From the IMG/VR virus record IMGVR_UViG_3300023174_000046, positions 62,001-126,000 of that record: DNA of 64,000 nucleotides. One strand, given 5' to 3'. This document shows, piece after piece, positions 841-63,400 of the stretch; within the stretch, counting starts at the first letter, position 1, and every line of letters begins with the position of its first letter. Under the pieces are notes generated by a model, which ran no database searches, was not told the DNA's origin, and saw only the letters and a program-made list of their open reading frames with translations. The position numbers and the translations under genes were made by a program.

Positions 841-1482
841 TTAAACACTCCAAGATGTACCTGCAAAAGGATTGCTCATGCCTTTGGTAACTTTGGTACC
901 AAGAGGTGCACCCATCTCAACGTTAATGCCTGCATTAACTACATTTACCTGCTCAAGTGATGGTTGTAATGTTGTTGCAATTGTATTGTTTGTAACCACA
1001 TGCTTATCAGAAGCATATGGGTTATGATCCGGTACATGTTGATAGCCTGAACTAACAATTGCAGAATTTTTATCATGCTCCCATACTTCAACCCTACTAA
1101 CCCAACATCTATTATTAGTTATGCCTCTTACATGCGCATCAGCTACATCATAACACCAGTCTGCTGTTCTCTCAATACCAACACCTTTGTCCATAACTCT
1201 TAGATCTGCAGCACCTAAGGTGTGTAAATTTTTAAAATGATCTAGCAAAGGATCATCAGCTGAAATGCATAATGTATGATCAAATTGATTTTCTAAGACT
1301 TGCTTAAGTTCCTTTAAACCACCAAAATCTACAACCCAGTTCTTTTCATCTAGATAATTACATTCAAACCAAAATTTTGCTATCAACCTGTATCCATGGA
1401 TATATTTGCAATGGCTGTCTGCTTTCCACTGTCTAAATGCACAACTTCCTAATTCAATTATCTTTGTACTTTCGTATTTCAT
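841..1482 (-). CDS. queD: 6-carboxy-5,6,7,8-tetrahydropterin synthase (QueD/PTPS family) with a ~65 aa low-complexity C-terminal tail
   Basis: SHCKYIHGY, WVVDFGGLKELK, FDHT, VEVWEHDKNSA motifs. Confidence 0.92.
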   Translation of the reverse strand: MKYESTKIIELGSCAFRQWKADSHCKYIHGYRLIAKFWFECNYLDEKNWVVDFGGLKELKQVLENQFDHTLCISADDPLLDHFKNLHTLGAADLRVMDKGVGIERTADWCYDVADAHVRGITNNRCWVSRVEVWEHDKNSAIVSSGYQHVPDHNPYASDKHVVTNNTIATTLQPSLEQVNVVNAGINVEMGAPLGTKVTKGMSNPFAGTSWSV

Positions 1483-1488
1483 GCTCTT

Positions 1489-1516
1489 ATTATAACTACA
1501 CTTTTATATGAATCAA
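1489..1516 (-). promoter_or_regulatory. Sigma70-like promoter 6 nt upstream of the queD ATG (leaderless)
   Basis: Minus strand TTGATT-N16-TATAAT-N6-ATG. Confidence 0.8.
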
Positions 1517-1550
1517 CTCTCAACATACCAACTCTTTATATTACTGTATT

Positions 1551-2493: not shown

Positions 2494-2891
2494 TGTAACA
2501 TATATTCCTTGTAAAGATCTTTAAGTTGAGCATCATTAATGCCATTATCCTTGAGAATAGCTTCAATTGAAACAATGTCGTTGAGTTGCATTATCATTGC
2601 TGCAACTGTCTCGTTTCCTATTTTATTTGCGAGAAATGTCTTCAATGCTTCGAGTCGTGGATTTGTTGCATCCATCATAGAGGCAGGCATATTGACCATG
2701 GGATTCATTTCTGCTGCCGGCTTGATAACATACACTGAAACTGCACCTTCACACTCTTCTAATACATAGCCTTCGTAGCCTGCATATGCTTTAAAAGCTT
2801 GATGCTCTTTGTTTAGAGGATCATACTTTATGCGTACTCTTCTCAGATTTTGTTCACTTATGGTTTTTTCAATAATATTAAAAAACTTCAT
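2490..2891 (-). CDS. Hypothetical late protein with capsid-targeting-like N-terminus
   Basis: MKFFNIIEKTISE; TAAATA 9 nt upstream of ATG. Confidence 0.6.
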   Translation of the reverse strand: MKFFNIIEKTISEQNLRRVRIKYDPLNKEHQAFKAYAGYEGYVLEECEGAVSVYVIKPAAEMNPMVNMPASMMDATNPRLEALKTFLANKIGNETVAAMIMQLNDIVSIEAILKDNGINDAQLKDLYKEYMLQ

Positions 2892-2945
2892 CTTCTATAT
2901 TATTTATTATTGAAAATTTAAAACCTTAGGTTATATTATGTAAAT

Positions 2946-3596
2946 ATGTCTAAGAAAGTATTAATTCCATACGCAAATCATAACCATCCTCGCTCTGAAC
3001 AAGAGAAGAATGAGATTATTGATCATGCCGCAAAAGCTTATGAAGCTTATCTTGATGCGCTTTGTATTGATTGGCGCAATGATCCAAATAGCTCCAACAC
3101 ACCTCACCGAGTTGCAAAGGCCTTTGTTGAAGATCTAGCTTCTGGTTGCTACAGCACACCACCCAAAGTAACTGCATTTGCTAATGTGGATCAATATGAT
3201 GGCATTGTGTGTCAAAATAATATTAAAGTAACTTCACTTTGTTCACATCATCATGCAGCGTTCACTGGTGTAGCACATGTAGCATACATACCTTCTCGTG
3301 ATGGTAAGGTCATTGGCTTGAGCAAGCTCAATCGCATTGTAGATTGGTTTTCACGCAGACCACAAGTGCAGGAGAATCTCACCATGCAAATTCACCAGCA
3401 TATTGATCAAGCTTGTGAATTAAACAATGGTGTGGCAGTTATGATTGAGGCAAAGCATACTTGTTGTTCCAATCGTGGCATCAAGCATGACTCTACTATG
3501 CGCACTGCGCGCATGTCTGGTGCGTTCTTGGATAACAATGACAACTCTCGTTCTGAGTTTTACAAGTTTATTGAATTTGCACAAAATAGGGATTAA
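2946..3596 (+). CDS. folE: GTP cyclohydrolase I
   Basis: TPHRVAKA, SLCSHHHAAF, GLSKLNRIV, RRPQVQENLT, AKHTCCSNRG; promoter TTGAAA-N16-TATATT at 2910-2937. Confidence 0.96.
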   Translation: MSKKVLIPYANHNHPRSEQEKNEIIDHAAKAYEAYLDALCIDWRNDPNSSNTPHRVAKAFVEDLASGCYSTPPKVTAFANVDQYDGIVCQNNIKVTSLCSHHHAAFTGVAHVAYIPSRDGKVIGLSKLNRIVDWFSRRPQVQENLTMQIHQHIDQACELNNGVAVMIEAKHTCCSNRGIKHDSTMRTARMSGAFLDNNDNSRSEFYKFIEFAQNRD

Positions 3597-7168: not shown

Positions 7169-7578
7169 ACCTGCCTGCTATTAATATCGATAAGTGCATC
7201 CAAGCTTTTCAAAAACTCTCTTCCCAACAAAACAGGTGTTTCATTTTTGCTTCTATCTGCAATAGAGAATTTTACTTTATTATATTTTTTGCCTTTGAAA
7301 GTGATATCAAACTCTACAATAGGTCTATCTTCATTAACACCCGATCCTATGTGTATTACAATTGTATCAGCAATATCCTTGTGTAGCGGTAAATTTTTTG
7401 TTGTTGAAACAAATCTTACCTTATTACCATCCATTTGTATCTCTCGACCGTCAAGAACGTTAAAAGCACTGTTACCTGAATCGGCCATGCTTTCAACTGT
7501 ACCAACACCTTCAATGGTAATGGGTTCTATTAAATTAACTACGCTTTTTTCGGAATAATAGCAACGAAAGGGCTTCAC
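7165..7578 (-). CDS. Retropepsin-like aspartic protease (RimK-associated 'ATP-dependent Zn protease' family)
   Basis: MADSGN catalytic D-S-G, ERP-like EDRP, FSIADRS...PVLLGREFL; TAAATA 5 nt before GTG. Confidence 0.8.
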   Translation of the reverse strand: MKPFRCYYSEKSVVNLIEPITIEGVGTVESMADSGNSAFNVLDGREIQMDGNKVRFVSTTKNLPLHKDIADTIVIHIGSGVNEDRPIVEFDITFKGKKYNKVKFSIADRSKNETPVLLGREFLKSLDALIDINSRQV

Positions 7579-7582
7579 CCCT

Positions 7583-7792
7583 TTATTTATTGTTTTTATT
7601 GTATGAAAGCTTAGTAGGCTTCTCTATATATTCACCCAAGTGTTTTGAGAATAATTTTACTTGATCAACAATAATATCTTTCTCTTCACCCTTCAATTTC
7701 TTTGTGCGTTCATATAAATCTAGTATAAAATCAGAGCTTATCTTAATATAGCTCACACCATCTTTGAGCTGATTTTTGTGATGAAATTTCAC
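7583..7792 (-). CDS. Hypothetical protein (69 aa)
   Basis: ORF with TAAGTA 5 nt upstream of the GTG start. Confidence 0.6.
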   Translation of the reverse strand: MKFHHKNQLKDGVSYIKISSDFILDLYERTKKLKGEEKDIIVDQVKLFSKHLGEYIEKPTKLSYNKNNK

Positions 7793-7868
7793 CTAAGTAC
7801 TTAAGAGAAAAGTTGATAAGTCTACTATTTATTAAAAAATTTTGCCCCATGTTTGCATAAATATTAAT

Positions 7869-8396
7869 ATGTACAGGAATGATATAGAAAATCTAAATAA
7901 TGCTTTCTTTAAAATACTCAATGAAGGTACTGCAGATTTGGGTCCACAGGCAGATTCTCAGCAAGGCCTTTCACCTGTTATACCAACTATAATCAAAACA
8001 AAAGAAGACGAAGAATGTGAGAATTGTAGTTGTGGTGATTCTGCTGCACCTGCTACAAGAGATCCCGATGAAATAGAGATGTCAAGAAGTGAACTATATA
8101 ACACAATTCATCATGCCGTTAGCTTATATTCAAAGCTCAAGACAATCAATAATCTTGAGGCTTGGGCAAGAGCAAAAATAACAAAAGCAGCCGATTATTT
8201 GAATTCTGTCAAACATTATCTTGATCATGAAGAAGTACAGAGCGAACAAAATGAAGAGATAGATCTCTTTAGCGCGTTTGATAAAGGATCAACAGATATC
8301 ATTGGTAAGCTTTCTGGTATTCTCTCTAGAGAGAGCAAAGAAAATCTCGAAAAGATTCTTTTTGAAGTTGTGCAGTTAATCGAAAAGAAGTCTTAG
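7869..8396 (+). CDS. Conserved T4-like hypothetical protein (LEAW..KIT.A.DYL domain), putative head-internal
   Basis: EMSRSEL...NLEAWARAKITKAADYLNSVKHYL; real start ATG 7869, 5 nt after TAAATA. Confidence 0.7.
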   Translation: MYRNDIENLNNAFFKILNEGTADLGPQADSQQGLSPVIPTIIKTKEDEECENCSCGDSAAPATRDPDEIEMSRSELYNTIHHAVSLYSKLKTINNLEAWARAKITKAADYLNSVKHYLDHEEVQSEQNEEIDLFSAFDKGSTDIIGKLSGILSRESKENLEKILFEVVQLIEKKS

Positions 8397-9504: not shown

Positions 9505-9981
9505 TTAGGTTTGTATTTGATTTGCAACATTTTTTATTTTAGTAGAAAGCTTTTTGAGAAGAACACCGTAAGATCTTTCAATATCTTTCTGCGGGTTATC
9601 AAAAGGATTCAAGCCGCCTCTTGCTTGACCACCTGCAAGAGTTTTTACTAATGCAAGATCATTTGCTGAAATTGTATTTTTACCGAGTATACTTGAAATA
9701 TTCTCTGCATTTTCTTCACCACCCTCTTCTGTGCTGTCTCCTTGCGGTGCAAAGATATCAACAACAAGATTACCATCTTCATCCATATCTACAATGTTAT
9801 AACCTGCAGAATGCTTGCGCATCATGCAATGACACTTCTTTTTAGATGTAGGGTGTTCATAGCTATGTACAATATCAAATTCGTCCGAAATATCAGGCTG
9901 ATTGCCACGTTTTTCGTGTGTCTCTTTGACGAGGTTTAAATTGTCATATATGGAAGATAGTTTAACAAGATACTTGCTCAC
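9505..9981 (-). CDS. Hypothetical late protein
   Basis: TAAATA-N5-GTG. Confidence 0.6.
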   Translation of the reverse strand: MSKYLVKLSSIYDNLNLVKETHEKRGNQPDISDEFDIVHSYEHPTSKKKCHCMMRKHSAGYNIVDMDEDGNLVVDIFAPQGDSTEEGGEENAENISSILGKNTISANDLALVKTLAGGQARGGLNPFDNPQKDIERSYGVLLKKLSTKIKNVANQIQT

Positions 9982-9992
9982 ATATATATTTA

Positions 9993-10559
9993 TTATTTGA
10001 GAAGCAGTTGTTTTGATTTAATTGCATTAAAGTAGATGTTAGATAAGAAGGTTAACCCGTATTTTTGTGAAAAAATGCGTATTTTTTGAAATGTAAACCT
10101 CTCGTAATTAGTCTTTTCAATAAAAGCTTTAATATTGAAGAGAATCTCTATGCCTTTTGCTTCATTTCTTTTCATTAAATGTGTAAAATATTCAAACGAA
10201 TAGCTTGTGATAAAGATCTTAATTGGAAGCAGTTTTGTTATTTTGCGGAGTAAAAGTTCAATAAAGAGAATAAGCTCTTCTTCAGGGACATACTTGTTGA
10301 GATCTGTTTTTGGAAGACTATTTGTATTATAAAAAACTACCACTTTCTCATTACTTTTTGCATGCAACACTTCTTCACATAATGCATATATTATGTTGTG
10401 ATACAATAATTTCTTGATATCTTTATTTCTTAGCTTTATATCTGTTAATTTATACTCGCCTAGATGTGTAAAAAAGTTGTGCAGGAACTTGCCGTTATAT
10501 ATTCTCGTAAAGTTTATAACATTTAAATTGTGATTTGGTAGTGATAGACTATCTATCAT
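9993..10559 (-). CDS. Hypothetical protein, weakly resembling the T4 RNase H N-terminal fold without catalytic Asp residues
   Basis: Promoter TTGAAT-N16-TATACT-N7-ATG (10567-10594); fold similarity judged by eye only. Confidence 0.55.
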   Translation of the reverse strand: MIDSLSLPNHNLNVINFTRIYNGKFLHNFFTHLGEYKLTDIKLRNKDIKKLLYHNIIYALCEEVLHAKSNEKVVVFYNTNSLPKTDLNKYVPEEELILFIELLLRKITKLLPIKIFITSYSFEYFTHLMKRNEAKGIEILFNIKAFIEKTNYERFTFQKIRIFSQKYGLTFLSNIYFNAIKSKQLLLK

Positions 10560-10586
10560 ATCTTACAGTATAGGTGATCCTATATA

Positions 10587-11012
10587 TTATTCAACAAATC
10601 GACTTTTAAATTCAGCAGGCGGTGTACCAATTCTCACATTTATTATTCCATTATAATAATCATCTCGAAGTAGCACATCTCGAGATATCTGTTCTTTTAT
10701 TTCAAAATAAGCCAACTCCCACTTTGAATTGCATGTACGTAAAATCTTAAAAGTAAATTTCTCTTTACCAAGCTTTAGAATATCTGCGTTAAGATCGTTT
10801 GAGGAGCTTGTATAACCCTTCCAGTCCGATTCTTTCATTTCAATTCTATTTCTCGTTTTACCCTTAAGAGGCTTTCTTTTTAACCTGGATTTGCATTGTT
10901 TTTTACCGATGTATTTTTTATTTGTAATTACATTTGTTATTTCATATATAAAACCGAATGTTGTTTCGTCTAAAACGACACCTTCGTGCAGAAGCCAGTG
11001 ACCTGTATCCAT
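10587..11012 (-). CDS. GIY-YIG endonuclease
   Basis: FGFIYEITN...KKYIGKK, ESDWKGYTSS, YFE, YYN; TAAATA-N5-ATG. Confidence 0.88.
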   Translation of the reverse strand: MDTGHWLLHEGVVLDETTFGFIYEITNVITNKKYIGKKQCKSRLKRKPLKGKTRNRIEMKESDWKGYTSSSNDLNADILKLGKEKFTFKILRTCNSKWELAYFEIKEQISRDVLLRDDYYNGIINVRIGTPPAEFKSRFVE

Positions 11013-11041
11013 TACGCTATTTAACTACCGGCTCGCAAAAG

Positions 11042-11302
11042 TCACATGCCAATAAAAGGTCTGCGTATAACAACCATCTTTGATTTATTTTTGCCTTTAG
11101 TTTTTTTGGCGCCCAAAGCAACCGGTTTGCGAAAATCGCCTTCTGCATACTTATCTTTACCGGGTGTACCTGAGGGATTGTCCTTCCAGTCTGATGTCTG
11201 GAATGTGCCCAGCGAACCGCCAGAACCAGCTGTATTTGAGGCAGCAGGTGCACCGCCTATATCCTCCATAAGCTTGGCAAACAATACGTCAAACATTTTC
11301 AC
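11042..11302 (-). CDS. Small late protein with capsid-targeting-like N-terminus and basic tail
   Basis: MKMFDVLFAKLME; perfect TATAAATA at 11309-11316. Confidence 0.6.
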   Translation of the reverse strand: MKMFDVLFAKLMEDIGGAPAASNTAGSGGSLGTFQTSDWKDNPSGTPGKDKYAEGDFRKPVALGAKKTKGKNKSKMVVIRRPFIGM

Positions 11303-11308
11303 TTTAAT

Positions 11309-11316
11309 TATTTATA
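11309..11316 (-). promoter_or_regulatory. T4-type late promoter TATAAATA
   Basis: Exact T4 gp55 consensus, 6 nt before GTG. Confidence 0.8.
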
Positions 11317-11336
11317 ACATATACTATAATAAAGAT

Positions 11337-11735
11337 ATGGAATTTAATATTCAGAAAATATTAATCGAAATTGAGAAAGACGTTGCTGTAGATGAATTAA
11401 ATCTACGGGAAGTGCAGTTCAAGCTACCTGCAATTAAGCATAAGTATGCTGGTCTTTTGATTAGATCGAAGATTGAGCTCAATAATAAGAAGAAGGAGCT
11501 TGATGAGCAGCGCAAGAGCGCTGTAGAGCAGATAAAAGAGAAAAGCCCTGTTAAATTAGCACCCAATACACTATTTGATACTGCAAATGAACTACCTAAT
11601 CTCAAAAAAATACGTAGCGAGATAGAAGAAATTGACTTGCTCATAACATTGTTAGAGAAAACTGAAAAGACCCTTTCTTCAATGACCTATGATATAAAGA
11701 ATATTATTGAAATACAAAAGCTTGAGACAACATGA
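11337..11735 (+). CDS. uvsY: Recombination mediator UvsY (real start ATG 11337)
   Basis: D..IDE..L...LP.IKHKY... and YDIKNIIE C-terminus; directly upstream of uvsW; TATAAT-N6-ATG. Confidence 0.82.
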   Translation: MEFNIQKILIEIEKDVAVDELNLREVQFKLPAIKHKYAGLLIRSKIELNNKKKELDEQRKSAVEQIKEKSPVKLAPNTLFDTANELPNLKKIRSEIEEIDLLITLLEKTEKTLSSMTYDIKNIIEIQKLETT

Positions 11736-13195: not shown

Positions 13196-13646
13196 AAAAG
13201 ATAAACCTTTTTATGTTAGCCCGAAGGAATTCGAAGCTGAGATTACTATCTATTACAATACCGGTAACATGTCAATTAATCTTGGTGAATCCATTACTAA
13301 GATTGCAAATGGATTGAGCTACGCACCTAATTTTATTAATTATACATACAAAGACGATATGGTTGGCGATGCAATTGTGAAGATGTTTTCTGCATTAAAG
13401 AATAAGAAATTTAAACTAAATAGCGGGTTTAGTCCTTTTTCATATTTTACTACTATTGCTTTTCATGCATTTATTAATAGAATTAAAAAAGAAAAGAAAC
13501 ACCACGCTGCAATTAATGATTACAGAGAAAAAGTTTATACAGATTTAATTCATTCATGCCCCGGTGGTGAGCAAATTTACGTAAAGCCTTCAGACAGTAA
13601 TAATGAAGATGGTGAAAATGATGTCTTTAGTAATTTGAATGGTTAA
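13143..13646 (+). CDS. gp55: Late-transcription sigma factor gp55 (start likely MKKKK at 13143)
   Basis: YV..KEF, KIANGLSYAPNFINYTYKDDMVGDA, PFSYFTTIAFHAFINRIKKEKK. Confidence 0.92.
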   Translation: MKKKKSNTTPPTSTKKPKKDKPFYVSPKEFEAEITIYYNTGNMSINLGESITKIANGLSYAPNFINYTYKDDMVGDAIVKMFSALKNKKFKLNSGFSPFSYFTTIAFHAFINRIKKEKKHHAAINDYREKVYTDLIHSCPGGEQIYVKPSDSNNEDGENDVFSNLNG

Positions 13647-17374: not shown

Positions 17375-17410
17375 GCTTGAATTATTTATTGTTTGTATTA
17401 ATATATTTTC

Positions 17411-18628: not shown

Positions 18629-18656
18629 TAGTTAGCTTTTCATTTATTATTATATT

Positions 18657-21233: not shown

Positions 21234-21263
21234 TTTTTTTATTCTTTATTATAATATTTAAAT

Positions 21264-21650
21264 ATGAGCAAAACATTAAACGTTACTACATTCGTTGACC
21301 ATATTGGTCGCGTTATTCTTGGTGAAGTTGTATCTGATACAAAAGATACACTCAAGATTAAGAACCCTGCAATCGTCCATATTGGACAAAACCCACAAAC
21401 TGGTCAAATCCAGGTACAGACAATTCCTTATTTCTTTAGGGAATTTGTTGCTGCAAATGCACAAAAAGAAGGTACAACGTGGAACTTTGGCAAAGATAAG
21501 ATTGTTACTGGCGATGTTGAGCTTGATTCCAGGCTTATTGAGCAGTACGAGAAGCTCTTCAGTGGCGTACCACAAGCGGTAGCCCCTGCACCTCAGCAGA
21601 GATCTGCTGGTGCCGATAAAGCTGAAGTTATTAAGTTGTTTGACGAATAA
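21264..21650 (+). CDS. Conserved hypothetical protein (possibly Sm-like beta fold)
   Basis: Beta-rich GRVILGEV...LKIKNPAIV; own promoter TTGATT-N16-TAATAT-N6-ATG. Confidence 0.65.
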   Translation: MSKTLNVTTFVDHIGRVILGEVVSDTKDTLKIKNPAIVHIGQNPQTGQIQVQTIPYFFREFVAANAQKEGTTWNFGKDKIVTGDVELDSRLIEQYEKLFSGVPQAVAPAPQQRSAGADKAEVIKLFDE

Positions 21651-37421: not shown

Positions 37422-37425
37422 TGGC

Positions 37426-44484: not shown

Positions 44485-44500
44485 CCTTTAAATAATTGTA

Positions 44501-47187: not shown

Positions 47188-47207
47188 TTGCTTGATTAAA
47201 TAATATT

Positions 47208-52096: not shown

Positions 52097-52522
52097 TACA
52101 TCGATAACGTTAGCTTCTTTTACGAGCTTCTTGAACATATCCTCTCTTGTACCGACAAGCATGTCCTTAGCTTCACCGATAAGATCTTTCTTGATTTCAT
52201 GGTCCATTTTTTTTAAGTCTTTAAGAGTATTGCTCTTTTTATCCTGCACAATTATTTTGTTTAAAGTCTCTATAGCAGTTGATGTTGCATTTAATAATTC
52301 TGCATATGCAGATAAATCTTTTGCATCAGGCGCCGCGTTTAAATAAACATTTAAATTCTTTACTAAATCTAAACCTTCATTAATTACAGTACTAGCACTT
52401 TCAATCACATACTCTTCTAAATTTTCTTTTGTAGCAGCTTTACGAAATTCTTTCTTAACTTCAGTATTTTTTTCTTTTAAAGCATCTATTATATTGTCAA
52501 TGTCATCACTATTATCAGGCAT
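52007..52522 (-). CDS. gp16: Terminase small subunit gp16-like
   Basis: Helical core G...V..L.......DA....AYAELL......IE.L.KI and late LVGTREDMFK motif as in T4-like gp16; TAAATA-N7-ATG. Confidence 0.62.
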   Translation of the reverse strand: MPDNSDDIDNIIDALKEKNTEVKKEFRKAATKENLEEYVIESASTVINEGLDLVKNLNVYLNAAPDAKDLSAYAELLNATSTAIETLNKIIVQDKKSNTLKDLKKMDHEIKKDLIGEAKDMLVGTREDMFKKLVKEANVIDVSTNEPASQAIERTETTTTTGQHILSGAAN

Positions 52523-52570
52523 ATATAGTTATTTATCTTGATTTCTAGAATTCTATATTATTATTAATAT

Positions 52571-53005
52571 ATGAGATCAGTACTAGAATTTATTAAGACG
52601 CATGAAGACGCGGTTTTACCCACGAAAAACCATGTTAATGATACAGGATATGATGTTTATAGTATTAAGAGTGTATGTATACCGGCACGAGGCTCTAATA
52701 TTGTGCCTGTAGGTCTTCAGTTTGCATATATTCCAGAAGATTATTGGGTAAGAGTAGAGTCGCGCAGCGGTTTAGGGTTCAAGCACGGTATAATGGCGCA
52801 TCCAGGTATTATTGATAATGGTTACCGTGGTGATGCAGGTATTAAGCTCTACAATTTAACTGAAAAGGACTATACAGTTTCGCGTGGTGATAGAATTGCA
52901 CAGTTTGTCTTGTACCCATTAATTTCAAATGTAACAGTTGGGTTTACTGAAGTAGTAGCTGAATCAGATAGAGGTGACAAGGGGTTTGGAAGCTCTGGTA
53001 AATGA
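52571..53005 (+). CDS. dut: Trimeric dUTPase
   Basis: DTGYD, SRSGLG, GIIDNGYRG, GDRIAQ, RGDKGFGSSG. Confidence 0.96.
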   Translation: MRSVLEFIKTHEDAVLPTKNHVNDTGYDVYSIKSVCIPARGSNIVPVGLQFAYIPEDYWVRVESRSGLGFKHGIMAHPGIIDNGYRGDAGIKLYNLTEKDYTVSRGDRIAQFVLYPLISNVTVGFTEVVAESDRGDKGFGSSGK

Positions 53006-53934
53006 ATTTTAATAATCTCTGGGTTGAAAAATACCGACCTAAATCTTTGTCTGATATTGTACTTGTTGAAGAGACGAGATCAATAGTTAATTCATTTAAA
53101 GACAAAAAAGAGATACCGAATCTCCTGTTAATCGGCATACAAGGTATTGGAAAAACTTCTCTGGCAAAAATCATTGTCAATGACATCTTAGGGTGTCAAT
53201 ATCTTTATATTAATGCAAGCGATGAGAATGGTATTGATACTATACGAAACAAGGTTGTAAGCTTTTCTAAGACCAAAAGCTTTGATGGTGGTATCAAGGT
53301 CATTATACTAGATGAGGTAGATGGTATTAGCCTAGAAGCGCAAAAAGCATTAAGAAATACAATGGAGGAATATTCTGCTAATACGCGTTTTATTTTGACA
53401 GGAAATTACAAGCATAAAATCATACAAGCGCTGCAAAGTCGTTGTCAGGAGTTAAATCTTATTCCCCCTTTAGAAGGCATGGCTAAGCGAGTATTAACAA
53501 TTTTAAGAAGTGAAAGTATAAAGCTAGATGATGCTCAAAAGAAAGACCTTGTTACTTTAATAAAAAAGCTGTACCCAGACTTTAGAAAAATAATTAACGA
53601 GATTCAAAAATTTAGCAGCTCTGGCTCTCTAACCATACCACAGCTATCCATTAACAACGATATTATTGTGAAGATAGCTGGATTTATAAAAGAAAAGAAG
53701 AGTAATATTGGTAGAAAATATTATATTGAAAATGAAGAAAAATTTCAAGGTGACTACACAACACTATTGCGTGAGCTTTTCAATTTTACAAATGATGCGT
53801 TAGATTTTAATAATGAAAAAGCAAAAAAAGCTTTGCTTGTTATTTCGGAGCATTTATATAGGAGCAGTTTTGTAGTTGATCAGGAGATTAACTTTTACAG
53901 TTGTATTATTGCGCTTGAAGGGCTAATAAGTTAG
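53002..53934 (+). CDS. gp44: Clamp loader large subunit (RFC-like AAA+)
   Basis: LWVEKYRP, G.QGIGKT, INASDENGIDTIR, ILDEVD, Q.ALR, LQSRC, YPDFRK. Confidence 0.95.
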   Translation: MNFNNLWVEKYRPKSLSDIVLVEETRSIVNSFKDKKEIPNLLLIGIQGIGKTSLAKIIVNDILGCQYLYINASDENGIDTIRNKVVSFSKTKSFDGGIKVIILDEVDGISLEAQKALRNTMEEYSANTRFILTGNYKHKIIQALQSRCQELNLIPPLEGMAKRVLTILRSESIKLDDAQKKDLVTLIKKLYPDFRKIINEIQKFSSSGSLTIPQLSINNDIIVKIAGFIKEKKSNIGRKYYIENEEKFQGDYTTLLRELFNFTNDALDFNNEKAKKALLVISEHLYRSSFVVDQEINFYSCIIALEGLIS

Positions 53935-54524
53935 CGCTTTGGCAAGTAACGGTGTACGTAGCTAGCTACCGAAGGTGACTTGTCGCCTTCCGCAGGCACT
54001 GCAGGAATCTTAACATTTTTATTAAGAAGCTTTCTATCGCCCTTTATAAGTTTACCTTTACCGTCATCGGAAGTTACTGTATGTGCAATTTGTTGCTCAT
54101 CTTCAGGTTTTTCTTGTTCAGGTTTAATTTGTGTCTTATCTTTTCTCTTTAATGAATCAGGAATAGGTGGTAAGTCCGTGCCATTATTATAAGGTTGTAA
54201 GAATTTTCCTGGAACTGTCAAGTACTCAACATATCTTCCAGGGGCAATTTCTTGTGTAATATCTACATCAAATTCACTGCCTGTAATCTCTGCATTGCCA
54301 CCACCTTGTGTTGTGGGTCTGATAGGCTTCACAGCACCTACTCTCAACAGAAGATCTGATTCTGCCCACGATTTTAACTTATTTTGGTATGCTTCTGTCT
54401 GATCTTTAAAAAAGTCCGATTTAAAAACTTCTGGTTTAATATGCACCATGTAACCATATAAAAACCCGCCACGTGTAAATTGCTGCAGGTATGACTCTAG
54501 CAAACCATTAAACTTTCTTTTCAT
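53931..54524 (-). CDS. Hypothetical late protein with capsid-targeting-like N-terminus
   Basis: MKRKFNGLLE; TATAAATA at 54531-54538, 6 nt before ATG. Confidence 0.65.
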   Translation of the reverse strand: MKRKFNGLLESYLQQFTRGGFLYGYMVHIKPEVFKSDFFKDQTEAYQNKLKSWAESDLLLRVGAVKPIRPTTQGGGNAEITGSEFDVDITQEIAPGRYVEYLTVPGKFLQPYNNGTDLPPIPDSLKRKDKTQIKPEQEKPEDEQQIAHTVTSDDGKGKLIKGDRKLLNKNVKIPAVPAEGDKSPSVASYVHRYLPKR

Positions 54525-54586
54525 TATATATATTTATATCTTTAAAACTAATTTTGTAGATATAATTTGGTACTAAATACTTATAT

Positions 54587-55057
54587 ATGAGTATTAAGAT
54601 AGAGAGCATTAAAGACGTAACTAATGTAAATGATCTTAAGTATCAAGACTTAAAGCTAGATTTTGAATACACATATACACAAAATTCCGAATTTTTAAAG
54701 AAAAATGAAATTATTGATTTGAAGGTAGATTACGATCTAAATGCTATTAAAAATAGTCTTAGAAACATGTTTTTGACTAATCGTGGGGAAAAGCTATTAA
54801 ACCCATATTTTGGCATTGGTTTAGCAAATTTTGTGTTCGATCAAGTCACGCAATCAACTGCCAAAGCGATTGGTGACGCTATTTTAAGCAATATAACCAC
54901 ATTTGAACCTAGAGTTCAAGTAAACAAAGTAAATGTTATTGCAAACGAAGATGACAATAGCTATACAATTAATATAATTTTAAGTGTGCCTCAATTAAAA
55001 GCTGAATTAGTAAATCTAACAGGCCTATTAAATAATAAAGGATTTAATTTTGCCTAA
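54587..55057 (+). CDS. gp25: Baseplate wedge subunit gp25
   Basis: AIKNSLRN.FLT..GEK..NP.FG..L, FEPRV. Confidence 0.92.
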   Translation: MSIKIESIKDVTNVNDLKYQDLKLDFEYTYTQNSEFLKKNEIIDLKVDYDLNAIKNSLRNMFLTNRGEKLLNPYFGIGLANFVFDQVTQSTAKAIGDAILSNITTFEPRVQVNKVNVIANEDDNSYTINIILSVPQLKAELVNLTGLLNNKGFNFA

Positions 55058-59900: not shown

Positions 59901-60425
59901 CTTAAGCGTGTTCTTGACCTTGCAAGTATTAAGCGAAACAAATTATTCGGTAATAAAAATCAAAATAATTACAGCTTTTCGAGCAATTTGCTTGAAACTA
60001 ATCTTGGCAATATCATAAATCTCGAAACTGACACTTTTTCAGCTACAGAAATACTTGTTGCGAAAGAAAAGTTTTCCAGTACTTACAAACCTGTAAACAC
60101 AACAATTATTAATGAGTATTCAGCAACTGATATAATTCCTTTTTCAGAATTTTCCTATGATTGGGGTTGGGGATTGGTAGCACCACAAACACTTTCAGGC
60201 TTGAATATTGGTGGTTATTATGACTTTTATCGTCTTAATATTACAGATCAACAGATTTATGATAATATAATTGATTTTAATAACCAAAATTCAAATATTA
60301 CACCCAATCTCAGCACATACAATGATTTTTACGGTGAAAATGGAATTGTAGATCAAAATATTACATACGCCTTTGTTAACGGCTTGAGATTAATCTCCAG
60401 TGCAATGAACGTATATTACAATTAA
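56919..60425 (+). CDS. Large baseplate protein (gp7-like position) with PKD domain and NHL-like beta-propeller
   Basis: WDFGDGT...H.YKYPG.Y.V.L (PKD); repeats PSSIALD, PSSVDVD, IVIDRN, ITVDGN. Confidence 0.7.
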   Translation: MALINTNELYIKVFDHTGAPILSTYALPQTPLTFVPDYSIVQLLSSVSFVSSLTSYTNTFYIPDTNDYSNIKIRWDFGDGTYQISPTGVHAYKYPGLYKVKLYLINENGESFKNNFVANVNIYNFLKDEWNFSPYKDFIVDIPAGRLSDKITINRQNSWQTYNVLSGTGYTFNLYSSGSGTYYYDVKNYYMDKWAHLKKFFKFIEKQTINDVLQDVIVDKVKTSNTEIYAKKVSDNIVICNKDDSGAFFVGTTGSADFYYTDDSNKNNTSTNDPIFIFANLDTSKFYDSLGFADQVYDKLTPLELSYLNTIPAVLPIIKTRYNPAATFTITSNGLDGEGDTTINSFALNKTSFANTKIPFVLKLKDQDNYTTKSYPYLSSTDSMPLTSYFFKINLLDENNTIVPSVSFFKTDFEKDIFQSGGFYRGYFVCDREVQNAKLSASVYIDDIPNFEQDTAFVFYSQPYTHYIPRIFSNILYNSIPGQQFATTTTTYDFLDTIDNRSIFTITQIPSSNNSDNDYCFWAADSDSDRLLKMSYTGDILATINLSAATLSDGTVADLRNIYGSASPSSIALDNNNNAFVTLFDSGSVIRINNITNLIDRIGIPPVSAITTNTFLTSSDYIANQGWVGEFTLLPSSVDVDKNGEVYVVYTHPQFTALTRFDNNLNYKKRISGFFGLNNYAQKIVIDRNNNIWMATTRKDTSSTGSANLSGKNDFIWILKDTAATPLGIPALTTFAGFKQISDITVDGNQNCWVSHDISTVTKLEYNPITQESTRYDFNMGEVYGNATDYLQSIEGISCNSLNEIVIVNNFDLKIYFLDASSTTQPVLSSLKQIQLQSAPNNFMEYPISAYYDSKYQAGGDFLGYNWINKYYYFSSNTKILTGTSSTFNIYPASGYNLMFKENENFDGEQMYRNMALMETLQDKNVFFDDFLGKIVGNQQSNANSALLKKIYEKIANFSDNIANVDTCNVDSLISKCNMFDVTYENYNYPYPASLKRVLDLASIKRNKLFGNKNQNNYSFSSNLLETNLGNIINLETDTFSATEILVAKEKFSSTYKPVNTTIINEYSATDIIPFSEFSYDWGWGLVAPQTLSGLNIGGYYDFYRLNITDQQIYDNIIDFNNQNSNITPNLSTYNDFYGENGIVDQNITYAFVNGLRLISSAMNVYYN

Positions 60426-60437
60426 ATAATACATAAT

Positions 60438-63400
60438 ATGTCCGATATTCTAGAGAATAATGTAATAGCAGTATCGGTTCCCGACTCTATAGTCTCGGGT
60501 GTTACACAAAATGCTGTTGACTTCAATAAACCACTATCTTTTACCGAATGGTTGGTGCGTACCAATCCAACTGAAACTGATAATGCTTATTTGATTGGCC
60601 AATACAAGTTATACCTATTAGCTTGGTATAAGAGTAAAAATTTAGATACTAAAAATACAGAAGATTTTGTTCGCTCTTCTTTTATTTCTCTATTAAGAGA
60701 GATTTTATTAAACTACTCAACATTAGAGGAACGTAGATTTGTAAGCAATGCTGATTTTACTAATGATTTAGATCTTTACGCAATTTTACCTTTTTTTGTT
60801 AAAAAAATAAAAGAAATCTGCAATTATTACGCGCTATTAAGACAGAATGTCAATTTTAAAAAATACGAAAACAGCTTGAAGGGCTCACAAGGTGGTGTTC
60901 TTTCTCTCTTAAAAAATGAAATTTATAAAAGCTTGCAAGCAATTCAGATATCATCAGCTGAATCAAACTTACTAAATCTATCTGCAGTTAAAAATAACTT
61001 AACTCTTGAAATAAAAGAATTGTTTGACGATTCACAATACTTTGATTTGAACCCTGCGCTCCCTGCTACAACATACAATCCCACGTTTACATCACAATTC
61101 TACTCATCAAACCTTAACGATTTAAATTCTACCTTATATACTGATTTTGATCAAAGTATAGTAGACGCAATAAAATCTTACCCATTCTTCTTAAATGATT
61201 TTAAAACTTCTTATTCAATTAATGTACAAGTACAAGCAACTGATCTAGAATATCTCAGAGACAAAGACTTTATAAACCAAATTAATAATCAAGATAAAAC
61301 TAATTTAAATCTTAATCTCGAAAAAGAGTTAATAGAAAAATTTATAGGTACCGATTACTACTATATTAGTACTGGAACAACTACAACAGATTTTGTATCT
61401 GGTGTTCTTTTTAAAGCTCAAGATAAAGCATCCAACTTTCTCAATAAACGTTTTCCTTCTGTTGCATCAGTACAAAACGAAAGTGATTTAAAAACTATAC
61501 GAGAGATTGGTGGTTTCTTTTTACCTGATAGATTAGGTGTTTTAAACTTTAATAATTTTAAGTATAAAGTAGAAATTGATAAAACACAACTACAACCTAA
61601 TAAAGTTTATGTTTTTCCGGACCCCTACAAATATGGTAATATTTCAAACCTTTCTTTAACTGATTTTGAAAGCCCTTTAATTTACGAAGAAGATGTGTCA
61701 TGGATGCATTACAACAGAACAGCTCAATATCTTTATGGTAACATTGTAAATAACCCACTCTATAAAAACTTTCACGCCTATCATAGTAGAAGTCAAACAG
61801 TTGGTTATGAGCCCATTGGTGTATCACGTGATATTGATAGCACTGAATTTTTTGAAGGCACAGGTAAAGATATTTGGGCAAATTCAGATGTATTTCCTGT
61901 TGTAGAAAATGTGCTGCCTATAGATGCACGTCAACTCAATTTACTTGCTATAAACAAAACTCTCGTCAAATATAAAAATGATATTTACGGCAATAATTAC
62001 GGGTTGTTTAAAGAAATTAACCCTGTAGGTGTTGGCCCCGATGGTAGCAATCAAGGTGATTTTATTTCTCAAGATGAATTAAACTTTTTTAATTTTACTG
62101 GTGGTCGTGGTGGACTAAACGGTACTGGTCGCAAAGGACTCTCTTATAATCAATTTAACGAACTAAGATCAACACAGAAAAAACCGTGTATGATACTTGA
62201 TGGGTATGTATTTTACGATATAACGGACGGTTATAATTTTAATTACTCAGTACCTAATCCTGACAAAAGAGTGTCTGGTGTCTTTACAAGAACTGTAACT
62301 CAAATACCACCAGGCAGCGGTTACTACACATCTGGACCCAGTATTCTCTCTGCAGCACCCGATCCATATATTAATTATAAAATTTCGTTTCCTTATTCTG
62401 CACCACCTAGCTTTAAGCCACTACCAACACCTTTGCTTCTTGTAGCGTACGGCAAAGGTCATTTTGTGCCTGATGATTTTTGCGATGTTAATACTGTAAG
62501 TTATTGTTTAGTGTTAGATTGTGTTACCTTTCTCGATTCACTGAGCAATGCAAGATTAGACGTATCATCTGATTTACCTTCATGGTCAACCGCTATACCT
62601 GTATATTACAGTGAATTACTCGAAGGCAGCTTAACAACTTCACTAACTAAGCCAAACAATATAGATAGAGCTACCTTCTCTTACACATACCCCGCTTCCG
62701 CGCAAGTAATACAGGAGTTAAATGGTTACAGGTTTAATCTTCAAGGACAAACACCTTGCGCAGTGAATAATACTGCAATTACACCAGGATTGGATTACAA
62801 TATTGATAATTCAAGCTTTGTAAACTTGCCTGTTCTGCCTGCTTTTGAAACCAAGGTTCAAGACTTATCTACTTCTCTTATTGGCAACAAAACCATTTAT
62901 GCAGGCCGTAACGAAGTAGTTGGTACTATGTATTACAAAAACGCTAATACCTCACGGGTAGATCTCATTCAAGATGCACTATCTTCTGTTTTTGCAAAAT
63001 ATCCAATAGATGTTCAAAATAATATATCACAAGGTGTAATCAACTTTGATCTCATTTTCAATGTTATTTTCATTGAAACAGTTAATTATTTTATAATTGA
63101 TAAATTAGACTATGATTACGAACAAAATAATGTTGAACCGTACAATAGCGATAAAAATTTCTTACCTACATACATAGTAGATAAAAATATTGAAAAAATA
63201 AGCAATATTTTCTATAATGAAAAATTAAACGAAGTTGTCTTTACCCGCATGGTATTGCTACCAACAATGAGTGCCAGCAATTTAAAGATTATCTACCCTG
63301 AAATTTATAAAATTGATATAACAACCCCGGTAATTAAAAAACTTTATCCAAATTTTGAATTAACTTATAATAACTTATCGAGCTTTATTCATATTGACGC

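What the first reader, a model, noticed from the sequence alone, without database searches (positions are those of the whole stretch)
1482..60440. Window-wide leaderless, Shine-Dalgarno-free expression program using two promoter classes that sit on the start codon
Seen: sigma70-like TTG(A/T)WW-N15-17-TAWWAT boxes lie 6-8 nt (usually exactly 6) before the start codons at 1482, 2946, 10559, 11337, 17411, 18657, 21264, 24882, 28267, 29558, 32410, 34259 and 52571. Late TAAATA boxes lie 5-9 nt before the starts at 2891, 7578, 7869, 9981, 11012, 11302, 17374, 26248, 30652, 32167, 33867, 36406, 37410, 39771, 42096, 42671, 44501, 47208, 52522, 54524, 54587 and 60438. I saw no AGGAG-like motif before these starts. 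Most other genes are coupled by ATGA/TAATG/TGATG overlaps. Established: sigma70 and T4 gp55 start transcription about 5-7 nt after the -10 box, and T4 itself uses leadered SD mRNAs. Inference: +1 falls on or within about 3 nt of the AUG/GUG. Most translation would then start by leaderless initiation or termination-reinitiation, possibly letting the phage bypass or shut down host SD-led initiation.
Basis: partly seen in the sequence, partly recalled or inferred. Interest (0 to 1): 0.85.

Follow-up and report, generated by a model that had tools for sequence, protein, structure and literature searches.

The report
Leaderless gene expression in T4-like phage
In this uncultured T4-like phage and its whole clade, promoters sit directly against the start codons and no gene has a ribosome-binding site. 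Most messages would therefore start at the AUG itself, which is unlike T4, a cyanophage and a pelagiphage analysed the same way.

Summary
Twenty-two genes have TAAATA 5-9 nt before the start, against 1.2 +/- 1.1 in shuffles. Eleven have TTG-N15-18-TAnnnT at 5-8 nt, against 0.7. No Shine-Dalgarno signal exists at any gene (mean anti-SD dG -1.15, background -1.30; T4 -5.65).

With the same pipeline, T4, pelagiphage Mosig and cyanophage P-SSM2 place TAAATA 12-50 nt from starts. The geometry is kept in about 40 related loci, down to roughly 33% protein identity. There the spacer peaks at 5 nt for TAAATA and 6 nt for the -10 hexamer. That one-base offset puts +1 on the A or G of the start codon in both classes.

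TAAATA is depleted twofold in coding sequence on both strands, so it acts at the DNA level. The two classes split cleanly into replication genes and virion genes. A gp55-like sigma, a PCNA-like clamp and a clamp loader are encoded. A conserved internal TATAAATA-N5-ATG marks a nested isoform.

Transcription start sites were not measured and the host is unknown. "Shutting down host SD-led initiation" is untested, although a conserved phage bS21 homologue is a candidate effector.

The parts
1480..1516 (-). Early promoter plus start: TTGATT-16-TATAAT-6-ATG (QueD-like gene 841-1482)
2910..2948 (+). Early promoter plus start: TTGAAA-18-TATTAT-6-ATG (GTP cyclohydrolase I 2946-3596)
10557..10594 (-). 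Early promoter plus start: TTGAAT-16-TATACT-7-ATG (188-aa ORF)
11303..11339 (+). Early-type promoter with weak -35: TTTAAT-16-TATAAT-6-ATG (UvsY-like 11337-11735)
17377..17413 (+). Early promoter plus start: TTGAAT-16-TAATAT-6-ATG (glycosyltransferase)
18623..18659 (+). Early promoter plus start: TTGTAA-16-TATTAT-6-GTG (family B DNA polymerase). The -35 contains the upstream gene's TAA stop. The GTG start and geometry are conserved in L045.
21230..21266 (+). Early promoter plus start: TTGATT-16-TAATAT-6-ATG (128-aa ORF plus UvsX operon). The -35 contains the polymerase TGA stop.
24848..24884 (+). Early promoter plus start: TTGATT-16-TATTAT-6-ATG (DnaB-like helicase). The -35 contains the upstream TGA stop.
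28231..28269 (+). Early promoter plus start: TTGATA-16-TATTAT-8-ATG (gp32-like SSB). The -35 contains the upstream TGA stop.
29523..29560 (+). Early promoter plus start: TTGAAA-15-TATAAT-8-ATG (PCNA-like sliding clamp)
32376..32412 (+). Early-type promoter: TTGTTT-16-CATAAT-6-GTG (primase)
34225..34261 (+). Early promoter plus start: TTGATA-16-TATAAT-6-GTG (124-aa ORF)
52538..52573 (+). Early promoter plus start: TTGATT-15-TATTAT-6-ATG (dUTPase plus clamp loader)
2889..2906 (-). Late box TAAATA-9-ATG
7576..7589 (-). Late box TAAATA-5-GTG
7858..7871 (+). Late box TAAATA-5-ATG
9979..9992 (-). Late box TAAATA-5-GTG
11010..11023 (-). Late box TAAATA-5-ATG (HNH/homing-endonuclease-like gene)
11300..11314 (-). 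Late box TAAATA-6-GTG
17372..17388 (-). Late box TAAATA-8-ATG
26213..26250 (+). Composite promoter: TTGATT-15-TAATAA-like TAAATA box, then 8 nt to ATG, written TTGATT-15-TAAATA-8-ATG. It heads the operon that contains the bS21 homologue and is conserved in L044-L046.
30640..30654 (+). Late box TAAATA-6-ATG, lying inside the 3' end of the upstream ORF
32156..32169 (+). Late box TAAATA-5-ATG. Its TAA is the stop codon of the upstream gene.
33856..33869 (+). Late box TAAATA-5-ATG
36404..36417 (-). Late box TAAATA-5-ATG, directly after an intrinsic terminator
36427..36448 (-). Intrinsic terminator hairpin (9-bp stem, 6 GC pairs, T-run). It ends 20 nt before the ATG at 36406. Equivalent hairpins occur in L045 and L047.
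37408..37421 (-). Late box TAAATA-5-ATG (311-aa acidic protein). The intergenic gap to the divergent TerL gene is only 15 nt.
37090..37103 (-). Internal TATAAATA-5-ATG inside gene 36475-37410, in frame (Met107). It predicts a nested 205-aa isoform and is conserved in 11 distinct relatives.
39757..39773 (+). Late box TATAAATA-8-ATG (tail sheath)
42085..42098 (+). Late box TAAATA-5-ATG (tail tube)
42659..42673 (+). Late box TAAATA-6-GTG
44489..44503 (+). Late box TAAATA-6-ATG
47197..47210 (+). Late box TAAATA-5-ATG (435-aa late protein)
52520..52535 (-). Late box TAAATA-7-ATG
54522..54536 (-). Late box TATAAATA-6-ATG
54574..54589 (+). Late box TAAATA-7-ATG (gp25-like baseplate wedge, followed by a gp6-like gene)
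60423..60440 (+). Late box TAAATA-9-ATG (ORF of more than 1186 aa that runs off the window)
7790..7803 (-). Variant box TAAGTA-5-GTG (69-aa ORF)
37412..37428 (+). Variant box TATAAGTA-8-ATG (large terminase). The same variant at 8 nt recurs 10 times among clade gene starts.
13107..13646 (+). gp55-like late sigma factor gene
   Evidence: phrog_234, E=1e-24
29558..30298 (+). PCNA-like sliding clamp, the gp45 analogue
   Evidence: pLDDT 89; PCNA top hits at E about 1e-13
53002..53934 (+). gp44-like clamp loader
   Evidence: phrog_168, E=3e-78
27399..27602 (+). Ribosomal protein bS21 homologue (67 aa), a candidate translation modifier

Best explanation
The window comes from a 217-kb contig of an uncultured, deep-branching T4-like myovirus. 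Its genome is built so that almost every transcription unit yields an mRNA that begins at, or within a few nt of, its start codon.

Early (replication and nucleotide-metabolism) genes are read by host sigma70-type holoenzyme from TTGAWW-N16-TATAAT-like promoters. The -10 hexamer ends 6 nt before ATG/GTG. The -35 often contains the previous gene's stop codon, so the 28-32-nt intergenic gap is nothing but promoter.

Late (virion) genes are read by RNA polymerase carrying the phage gp55-like sigma. By analogy with T4, it is probably activated by the phage sliding clamp. Its TAAATA boxes end 5 nt (range 5-9) before ATG/GTG. Both geometries put +1 on the A or G of the start codon.

Translation of the first cistron would then be leaderless, by recognition of a 5'-terminal AUG/GUG. 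Downstream cistrons would be translated by termination-reinitiation at overlapping or abutting stop/start codons. No gene uses a Shine-Dalgarno sequence.

Shown:
- the motifs, their spacing and their statistics;
- conservation across the clade;
- depletion of TAAATA on both strands of coding sequence;
- the split between early and late functions;
- the presence of the sigma, the clamp and the clamp loader.

Inferred:
- the exact start sites;
- the mode of ribosome recruitment;
- clamp dependence of late transcription.
For: 1. The motif-to-start spacing is sharply peaked and far above chance.
2. Among 413 unique clade gene starts, the TAAATA spacer peaks at 5 (77 sites) and 6 (34). The sigma70-like -10 spacer peaks at 6 (33) and 5 (10). 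That one-base offset is what the positions of a -10 hexamer and the T4 late TATA box relative to +1 predict (box position from my own knowledge; the review PMC2988020, places the box about one helical turn upstream of the start site).
3. TAAATA is about twofold depleted in coding sequence on both strands: 29 against 60 +/- 6.5 in sense and 27 against 52 +/- 5.3 in antisense. TATAAT and other hexamers are not depleted. This points to a DNA-level signal.
4. The split by function is complete. Sigma70-like promoters precede QueD, FolE, a glycosyltransferase, PolB, the UvsX operon, the DnaB-like helicase, gp32, the clamp, the primase, and dUTPase plus clamp loader. TAAATA precedes the sheath, tube, hub, baseplate wedge, head closure and an HNH gene.
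5. A gp55-like sigma, a PCNA-like clamp and a clamp loader are encoded.
6. Orthologue comparison shows the box and its spacing kept while the flanks diverge. Relatives have also gained boxes where the window uses an ATGA overlap. The feature reaches relatives at 33-40% clamp identity.
7. Space is tight. There is a terminator, then a box, then the ATG within 20 nt at 36406. Divergent genes are only 15-62 nt apart. Stop codons are embedded in -35 and TAAATA elements.
8. A conserved internal TATAAATA-N5-ATG sits at Met107 of gene 36475-37410 in all relatives.
9. Promoter-adjacent starts are ATG (28) or GTG (7) and never TTG. This matches the 5'-RTG rule for leaderless translation in mycobacteria (PMC4633059).
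10. T4, Mosig and P-SSM2 put TAAATA 12-50 nt upstream.
Against: - No transcript 5' end has been measured for this phage or any relative.
- The phage sigma may choose start sites differently from T4 gp55.
- Boxes with 7-9-nt spacers imply 2-4-nt leaders rather than none.
- Only one intrinsic terminator was found. Many mRNAs are therefore probably polycistronic read-through products, in which these start codons are internal. The share of protein made from truly leaderless messages is unknown.
- No gp33 homologue was found.
- Seven of 35 starts are GTG, and GTG is very poor for leaderless initiation in E. coli (PMC4633059). The host ribosome must therefore behave differently from E. coli's.
- The host is unknown.
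Confidence: 0.8

Rival explanations
1. The promoters are real, but most protein comes from long polycistronic read-through transcripts. The same start codons, now internal, would be reached by 70S scanning or reinitiation, or by an SD-independent 30S pathway of the host. Leaderless initiation would be a minor route.
For: Only one intrinsic terminator lies next to a gene start, and the scan of 1-20 kb found no excess of terminators. Strings of late genes each carry their own box with 14-30-nt gaps and no terminator between them. Internal, coupled genes also lack SD, so an SD-independent internal initiation route must exist in any case.
Against: This does not explain why the box-to-start distance is fixed to within 1 nt across a clade. 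It also does not explain why an internal isoform start carries its own box at 5 nt. If leaders were tolerated, spacing would drift, as it does in T4, Mosig and P-SSM2.
Confidence: 0.12
2. TAAATA and the TATAAT-like elements act at the RNA level. They would be AU-rich, SD-independent ribosome-recruitment signals (S1-type or Bacteroidia-like upstream adenines) on leadered mRNAs made from distant promoters.
For: All genes lack SD, so some other start-selection cue is needed. The motif is positioned relative to the start codon. SD-blind bacteria that use upstream A-rich cues are known (PMC7797042; PMC13000457 abstract).
Against: A -35 TTGA sits at a fixed 15-18 nt from the TATAAT-like element. TAAATA is depleted on the antisense strand as well as the sense strand. 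The exact hexamer is required, and A-rich variants such as AAAATA and TAAAAA show no peak. The two motifs split into early and late genes. A gp55 homologue is encoded. The motif is absent before most coupled genes.
Confidence: 0.05
3. It is an artefact. Either start codons were mis-assigned (the true starts lying downstream with ordinary leaders), or the matches are chance in AT-rich DNA and follow from defining ORFs from the first start after a stop.
For: AT-rich spacers are full of stop codons, and TAAATA contains TAA, which is in frame at spacers 6 and 9.
Against: The modal spacer of 5 puts TAA out of frame. TAA-containing control hexamers show no peak. The same pipeline gives no peak in T4, Mosig or P-SSM2. 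Shuffles give about 1-2 against 22 observed. Orthologues align from residue 1 and keep the same first codons at 35-98% identity.
Confidence: 0.02

Closest known systems
Thermus thermophilus phage phiYS40 (and P23-45): mostly leaderless middle and late transcripts
   Same: This is a phage-wide programme in which most middle and late mRNAs lack a leader and SD. Their promoters consist essentially of a -10-type element next to the start codon (PMC3594737, citing Sevostyanova et al. 2007).
   Different: Those are unrelated phages of a Deinococcus-Thermus host that is itself rich in leaderless genes (PMC12340547, PMC3160421). Here the lineage is T4-like. The early genes also appear leaderless. The late element is the T4-type TAAATA box with a gp55-like sigma. 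The IF2-up and IF3-down shift reported for phiYS40 could not be examined.
Phage T4 late transcription (TATAAATA, gp55, gp33, gp45 clamp)
   Same: It shares the core box sequence, the absence of a -35 at most late sites, the AT-rich stretch after the box, and a gp55 homologue, a sliding clamp and a clamp loader. The box also precedes virion genes.
   Different: T4 places the box 20-29 nt before starts and uses strong SDs. Here the box is 5-9 nt away and there is no SD. Only 8 of 83 boxes have the full TATAAATA. No gp33 was found.
[quoted passage not shown]
   Same: A TANNNT or TATAAT element lies about 6-7 nt before the start codon, the start is a 5'-terminal ATG or GTG, and there is no SD (PMC3160421, PMC12340547, PMC4633059).
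   Different: In those organisms about 20-40% of genes are leaderless and the leadered genes keep SDs. Here about half of all genes, and nearly every first cistron, have the geometry, and no gene has an SD.
Lambda cI mRNA from PRM
   Same: It is the classic phage leaderless mRNA, with +1 equal to the A of AUG. It is translated by 70S-type initiation, and its translation is influenced by uS2 and bS21 and by the position of the anti-SD (PMC10491246).
   Different: It is a single gene in an otherwise SD-using phage.
Phage-encoded ribosomal protein bS21 (pelagiphage HTVC008M and Mosig; Bacteroidetes-infecting lake phages)
   Same: It is a small bS21 homologue carried by large aquatic phages and proposed to replace the host bS21 and favour phage mRNAs (PMC6375957, PMC9723584).
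   Different: The protein here is very divergent (29% identity to Mosig S21). Its C-terminal tail is short and basic and ends in an invariant KWKFY. It sits in the replication module behind a composite promoter. Its link to SD-free expression is only a hypothesis.

Membership tests
Sigma70-type (-35/-10) bacterial promoter | A TTGACA-like -35 and a TATAAT-like -10 separated by 16-18 bp | tested here: met
   13 sites in the window; 9 have a 16-nt gap, the rest 15 or 18. The pattern abuts 11 starts against 0.7 expected. Across the clade the gap is 16 in 37, 17 in 11, 15 in 12 and 18 in 5.
Sigma70-type (-35/-10) bacterial promoter | Transcription starts about 7 nt after the -10 hexamer | not testable with these tools
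   No 5'-end data are available. The geometry (6 nt to RTG) would put +1 on the start codon.
T4-type late promoter (gp55-dependent) | A TATAAATA box at about -10 with no -35 element | tested here: met
   The core TAAATA is exact at 22 starts, and single-base variants are almost absent. The full 8-mer occurs in only 8 of 83 boxes. No -35 is present except at 26248.
T4-type late promoter (gp55-dependent) | The phage encodes a gp55 sigma | tested here: met
   13107-13646 matches phrog_234 (late sigma transcription factor) at E=1e-24. It sits between the UvsW-like and gp47-like genes, as in Mosig and P-SSM2.
T4-type late promoter (gp55-dependent) | A sliding clamp (gp45) and clamp loader act as activator | tested here: met
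   Both genes are present: a PCNA-like fold for 29558-30298 and a gp44-like loader at 53002-53934. Their role in transcription was not tested.
T4-type late promoter (gp55-dependent) | A gp33 co-activator | tested here: inconclusive
   No PHROG or Pfam hit among the small ORFs of the window. Only 64 kb of the 217-kb contig was seen, and gp33 is poorly conserved.
T4-type late promoter (gp55-dependent) | It precedes late (virion) genes | tested here: met
   Sheath, tube, hub, gp25-like and gp6-like wedge, head closure, and an HNH gene.
Leaderless mRNA | The transcript 5' end coincides with the start codon (5'UTR of 0 to about 5 nt) | not testable with these tools
   Inferred from the promoter-to-start distance only.
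Leaderless mRNA | A -10-type element about 6-7 nt upstream of the start codon | tested here: met
   This matches the 'TA-like signal about 10-12 bp upstream of the TIS' criterion of PMC3160421.
Leaderless mRNA | An ATG or GTG start and no SD | tested here: met
   28 ATG, 7 GTG and 0 TTG. Anti-SD dG is at background.
phiYS40-type phage leaderless programme | The host is rich in leaderless genes, and infection shifts the IF2/IF3 balance | not testable with these tools
   The host is unknown. There are no expression data.
Ribosomal protein bS21 (PF01165) | A sequence-profile match over the whole two-helix protein, including the KPS/T motif | tested here: met
   Pfam gives 24.1 bits, E=3e-5, just below the gathering score of 27. 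A family profile searched against the PDB gives E=3e-5, and all 18 hits are bS21, in register. K48-P49-S50 is invariant. Homologues carry precomputed PF01165 hits and the JGI name 'ribosomal protein S21'. PHROG S21 gives E=0.002.
Bacteroidia-type bS21 (sequesters the anti-SD) | A signature Tyr 12 residues after the Ser of KPS, and a weakly basic C-terminal domain (PMC7797042) | tested here: not met
   The residue at +12 is Leu62. The aromatic residues W64, F66 and Y67 lie at +14 to +17. The tail MLKKLKKKNAHLKWKFY is strongly basic. No alignment to the F. johnsoniae protein itself was possible.
Translational coupling (termination-reinitiation) | The start codon overlaps or abuts the upstream stop codon on the same strand | tested here: met
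   34 of 73 genes have a gap of 4 nt or less, many as ATGA overlaps. The function was not tested.

The most novel reading that the evidence does not exclude
The clade infects a host that does use Shine-Dalgarno initiation, but has purged SD from its whole genome. It would then rely only on 70S-type initiation: a 5'-terminal AUG/GUG plus reinitiation at overlapping stops. The conserved phage bS21 variant (invariant KWKFY tail) would enter host 30S subunits and displace or mask the anti-SD. That would suppress SD-led host translation and favour the phage's leaderless messages. This would be a translational host-takeover switch in a T4-like phage.
Probability: 0.15. Interest if true: 0.9.

Novelty: new variant of a known kind. 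Interest (0 to 1): 0.72.

Why it matters
T4-like phages are the textbook case of leadered, SD-driven mRNAs with translational repressors such as RegA. If this reading is right, a large and widespread environmental branch of the same lineage has moved both its host-sigma early promoters and its gp55-type late promoters onto the start codons and dropped SD altogether.

- It would extend phage-wide leaderless expression, so far documented for Thermus phages, to the T4 superfamily.
- It gives a very clean natural data set of more than 100 promoter-start pairs with 1-nt spacing resolution. These can be used to study start-site choice by gp55-type sigma factors and the requirements of leaderless translation.
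- It gives a concrete rule for annotating these genomes: start codon = box + 5 or 6 nt, including nested internal isoforms.
- It offers a testable link between phage-encoded bS21 and SD-independent initiation.
- It constrains the unknown host, whose ribosomes must translate 5'-AUG and 5'-GUG mRNAs efficiently.

Tried and rejected
- **Host identification.** Two genome-contig scans found no relatives, one with the 435-aa late protein alignment and one with the bS21 alignment. tblastn against isolate phages gave only 31-39% identity to cyanophages, pelagiphages and rhizobiophages, or nothing at all. A literature look-up of the sample ids gave no habitat or host.
- **Bacteroidota host.** I considered this because of the SD-free genes. 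The early promoters are canonical TTGA/TATAAT, not the -33 TTTG / -7 TAnnTTTG type (promoter type from my own knowledge), and the bS21 lacks the Bacteroidia signature. It is therefore not favoured, but it is not excluded.
- **SD-like motif depletion inside coding sequence, as a proxy for an active host anti-SD.** Depletion is as strong as in T4 (GGAGG at 0.34 of expectation). The complement CCTCC/CTCC is equally depleted in the window and not in T4, so the result is ambiguous.
- **A at +4 as a leaderless recognition cue (PMC10491246).** There is no difference between promoter-adjacent and other genes, 21/35 against 23/38.
- **Generic promoter and terminator scan.** It is too noisy in 33% GC DNA: 101 promoter-like sites against 78 expected, and terminators at chance level. 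I replaced it with my own tests.
- **Rfam.** No hit.
- **tRNAs.** None.
- **gp33 and RegA homologues.** Not found in the window.
- **Neighbours of bS21.** They have no translation-related domains. By position and size, 27587-28234 is probably the gp59 helicase loader; this is an inference only.
- **Primary paper.** The phiYS40 paper (PMC1885378) is not held. It is cited second-hand through PMC3594737.
- **Short Logan contigs carrying the 435-aa gene.** They do not begin at the ATG, so they give no evidence on the transcription start site.

Full report
**What the window is.**
- The 64-kb window is part of IMGVR_UViG_3300023174_000046, a 217-kb contig. Its GC content is about 33%.
- It encodes T4-type core genes: a family B DNA polymerase, gp46/gp47-like nuclease subunits, a UvsW-like helicase, UvsX, UvsY, a DnaB-like helicase, a primase, a gp32-like SSB, a clamp loader, a T4-type large terminase, tail sheath, tail tube, and baseplate hub and wedge proteins.
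- The nearest isolates share only 31-39% protein identity. They are cyanophages, Pelagibacter phage Mosig and rhizobiophages. Megablast against isolate phages finds nothing.
- It therefore represents a deep, uncultured branch of the T4 superfamily.

**Checking the observation.**
- I called 73 genes and read the 45-50 nt before every start.
- The early class reads TTGNNN, a 15-18-nt gap (16 in 9 of 13), a TATAAT-like hexamer, then 6 nt (10 of 13) to ATG/GTG.
- The late class is the exact hexamer TAAATA followed by 5 nt (10 sites), 6 (5), 7 (2), 8 (3) or 9 (2).
- Of 83 TAAATA on both strands, 22 lie 5-9 nt before a called start. Dinucleotide shuffles of the upstream regions give 1.2 +/- 1.1, or 2.4 +/- 1.5 when only the last 20 nt are shuffled. 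The sigma70-like pattern abuts 11 starts against 0.7 expected.
- Hexamers of the same composition show no such peak.
- Across the clade, single-base variants of TAAATA are essentially unused apart from a few TAAGTA and TAAATT. The signal is a specific word, not AT-richness.
- Of 14 TAAATA-N5-RTG sites in the window, 10 are gene starts and one more is a conserved internal start. Of 6 sites with N6, 5 are gene starts.

**Controls treated identically.**
- An annotation-free measure was the distance from each TAAATA to the nearest start that opens a long ORF. It puts 20 of 26 cases at 4-9 nt in the window.
- In T4, 11 of 19 cases fall at 20-29 nt and one at 4-9. In pelagiphage Mosig most fall at 20-59 nt.
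- In cyanomyophage P-SSM2, using annotated starts, distances run from 12 to 53 nt in the structural region and none falls at 5-9.
- Mean anti-SD pairing energy upstream of starts is at background in the window (-1.15 against -1.30). It is strong in T4 (-5.65 against -1.66) and Mosig (-5.30 against -1.30), and weak in P-SSM2 (-2.9 against -2.6).
- SD poverty alone is therefore not unique. The promoter-on-start geometry is.
- The two GGAGG sites in the window, before 39119 and 50477, are not conserved in relatives and are chance.

**Evidence that the motifs are promoters.**
- TAAATA is about twofold depleted inside coding sequence on both strands relative to synonymous-codon shuffles, whereas TATAAT and other hexamers are not. 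An RNA-level signal would be avoided on the sense strand only.
- The TATAAT-like element is tied to a TTGA at a fixed distance.
- The two classes split without exception by function. Sigma70-like sites precede nucleotide-metabolism and replication genes. TAAATA precedes virion genes and an HNH endonuclease.
- The phage encodes a gp55-like late sigma, a clamp loader and a 246-aa protein whose model (pLDDT 89) matches PCNA clamps at E of about 1e-13. No gp33 was found.

**Evidence that the geometry matters.**
- In orthologue comparisons with loci at 35-98% protein identity, the box and its distance to the ATG are kept while the flanks diverge. Relatives have acquired a box where the window uses an ATGA overlap, at 43594 and 48512.
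- Thirty IMG/VR loci with 45-100% sheath identity show the same pattern and no SD. So do more distant relatives reached through the clamp protein at 33-44% identity, including ENA, Tara and one NCBI MAG contig.
- Pooling 413 unique gene starts, the TAAATA spacer peaks at 5 (77) and 6 (34). The -10 hexamer spacer peaks at 6 (33) and 5 (10).
- A -10 hexamer occupies -12 to -7, and the T4 late box occupies about -13 to -6. The coordinates are from my own knowledge. The review PMC2988020 states that the 8-bp TATA box lies about one helical turn upstream of the start site, at the position of the -10 element.
- Both peaks therefore place +1 on the first base of the start codon, a purine in every case: 28 ATG, 7 GTG and no TTG.
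- The genome leaves no room for leaders. Several -35 hexamers contain the stop codon of the preceding gene, so the 28-32-nt gap is pure promoter. One TAAATA contains the upstream TAA stop. Divergent genes are 15-62 nt apart. At 36406 a strong terminator hairpin ends 20 nt before the ATG, with the box in between.

**An internal test case.**
- Inside the acidic 311-aa gene 36475-37410 (minus strand), a full TATAAATA lies 5 nt before the in-frame ATG of Met107.
- This geometry is kept in all 11 distinct relatives that cover the site, down to 31% identity, although the hexamer is otherwise avoided in coding sequence.
- The simplest reading is an internal late promoter that makes a leaderless mRNA for a nested 205-aa isoform. 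SD-using phages achieve the same with internal ribosome-binding sites.

**How it most likely works.**
- Host holoenzyme (early) and gp55-like holoenzyme (late) start transcription on the A or G of the start codon.
- The 5'-terminal AUG/GUG is recognised without SD.
- Downstream cistrons are translated by reinitiation at overlapping or abutting stops: 34 of 73 genes have a gap of 4 nt or less.
- Seven genes lack a canonical call. Five of them carry variant or weak elements: TAAGTA at 5 nt (7792), TATAAGTA at 8 nt before the terminase (a variant that recurs 10 times at 8 nt in the clade), TAAGTA at 11 nt (45292), and weak -35 or -10 elements at 11337 and 32410.
- Because terminators are rare, read-through polycistronic mRNAs must also exist. 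How much protein comes from each route is unknown.
[quoted passage not shown] In E. coli leaderless ATG gives about 10% of leadered expression and GTG far less (PMC4633059). The 20% GTG share here implies a host ribosome of the first kind.

**The host-shutoff idea.**
- I could not identify the host.
- I did find a conserved 67-aa bS21 homologue at 27399-27602. Pfam gives E=3e-5, just under threshold. A family profile searched against the PDB gives E=3e-5 with only bS21 hits. The KPS motif is invariant. Homologues are named S21 by JGI.
- The gene is syntenic in relatives at the 55% level and sits in an operon behind a composite TTGATT-15-TAAATA promoter.
- bS21 sits next to the anti-SD. It sequesters the anti-SD in Bacteroidia (PMC7797042), its loss favours leaderless lambda cI translation in E. 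coli (PMC10491246), and phage copies have been proposed to bias translation toward phage mRNAs (PMC6375957, PMC9723584).
- The phage protein lacks the Bacteroidia Tyr signature at the expected offset and has a basic tail ending in an invariant KWKFY.
- Distant relatives with the same SD-free, box-on-start architecture have no bS21 at the syntenic position. bS21 is therefore not required for the architecture.
- The takeover model remains a hypothesis. A host that natively handles SD-less, leaderless mRNA is at least as likely.

**Comparison with what is known.**
- Phage-wide leaderless expression is documented for Thermus phage phiYS40 (PMC3594737).
- The pattern of a -10 element adjacent to the ORF is established for Deinococcus-Thermus and Actinobacteria (PMC12340547, PMC3160421).
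- My searches of the held literature found no report of this in T4-like phages, cyanophages or pelagiphages.
- I therefore rate it a new variant of a known kind. The mechanism is familiar. Its use for both temporal classes across a whole T4-like clade, with a gp55-type box, appears undescribed.

Noticed in passing
window 27399-27602 (+): A divergent ribosomal protein bS21 homologue of 67 aa, with an invariant KPS motif and an invariant KWKFY C-terminus. It is syntenic in relatives (L044-L046) between the DnaB-like helicase and gp32. It is absent at that position in more distant relatives (L047, L048).
   Followed up: yes
window 37090-37103 (-), inside gene 36475-37410: An in-frame internal TATAAATA-N5-ATG at Met107 of an acidic, scaffold-like 311-aa protein. 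It is conserved in all relatives down to 31% identity and predicts a nested 205-aa isoform made from its own leaderless mRNA.
   Followed up: yes
window 841-1482 (-), 2946-3596 (+), about 22788-23525 (+), 23530-24180 (+): QueD-like, GTP cyclohydrolase I, QueC-like and glutamine amidotransferase genes. Together they form a 7-deazaguanine (preQ0/archaeosine-type) pathway that probably modifies the phage DNA. The genes are also present in relatives (L045, L047-L049).
   Followed up: partly
window 18623-18628, 21230-21235, 24848-24853, 28231-28236, 32156-32161: Stop codons of upstream genes are embedded in the next gene's promoter: TGA or TAA inside the -35 TTGA/TTGTAA, and TAA inside TAAATA. This gives very regular 28-32-nt intergenic gaps.
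   Followed up: partly
window 37408-37428: The divergent genes 37410(-) and 37426(+, large terminase) are only 15 nt apart. The near-palindrome ATAAATACTTAT / ATAAGTATTTAT supplies a TAAATA box for one strand and a TAAGTA variant for the other.
   Followed up: partly
window-wide coding sequence: GGAG/GAGG and their complements CTCC/CCTC are both 1.5-3-fold depleted relative to synonymous shuffles. In T4 only the SD-like strand is depleted. This could reflect restriction-site avoidance, or SD avoidance combined with something else.
   Followed up: partly
L050 (NCBI GCA_002687185.1, contig NYZO01000029.1): A 7.7-kb fragment of a phage from this broad clade (DnaB-like helicase, gp32, clamp, epimerase) is deposited in a MAG labelled 'archaeon'. 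This is most likely mis-binning and not evidence about the host.
   Followed up: no
window 39119-39727 and 42096-42641 (+): Two tail-tube paralogues (phrog_45) flank the sheath gene. The first is overlap-coupled to the terminase and the second has its own TAAATA-5-ATG.
   Followed up: no
window 20686 (+) and 35043 (-): Two further TAAATA-N5/6-RTG sites inside genes open short ORFs of 24 and 37 codons. They could be small leaderless genes or tolerated spurious sites.
   Followed up: no
window 56919-60425 and 60438 to beyond 64000 (+): Two very large late proteins: one of 1168 aa with PKD domains, and one of more than 1186 aa that runs off the window. They are probably tail fibre or baseplate-distal proteins.
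   Followed up: no
L047 2533-3775: A distant relative carries heme oxygenase and a ferredoxin-dependent bilin reductase. These auxiliary genes are typical of cyanophages and pelagimyophages and give a weak hint about habitat and host.
   Followed up: no
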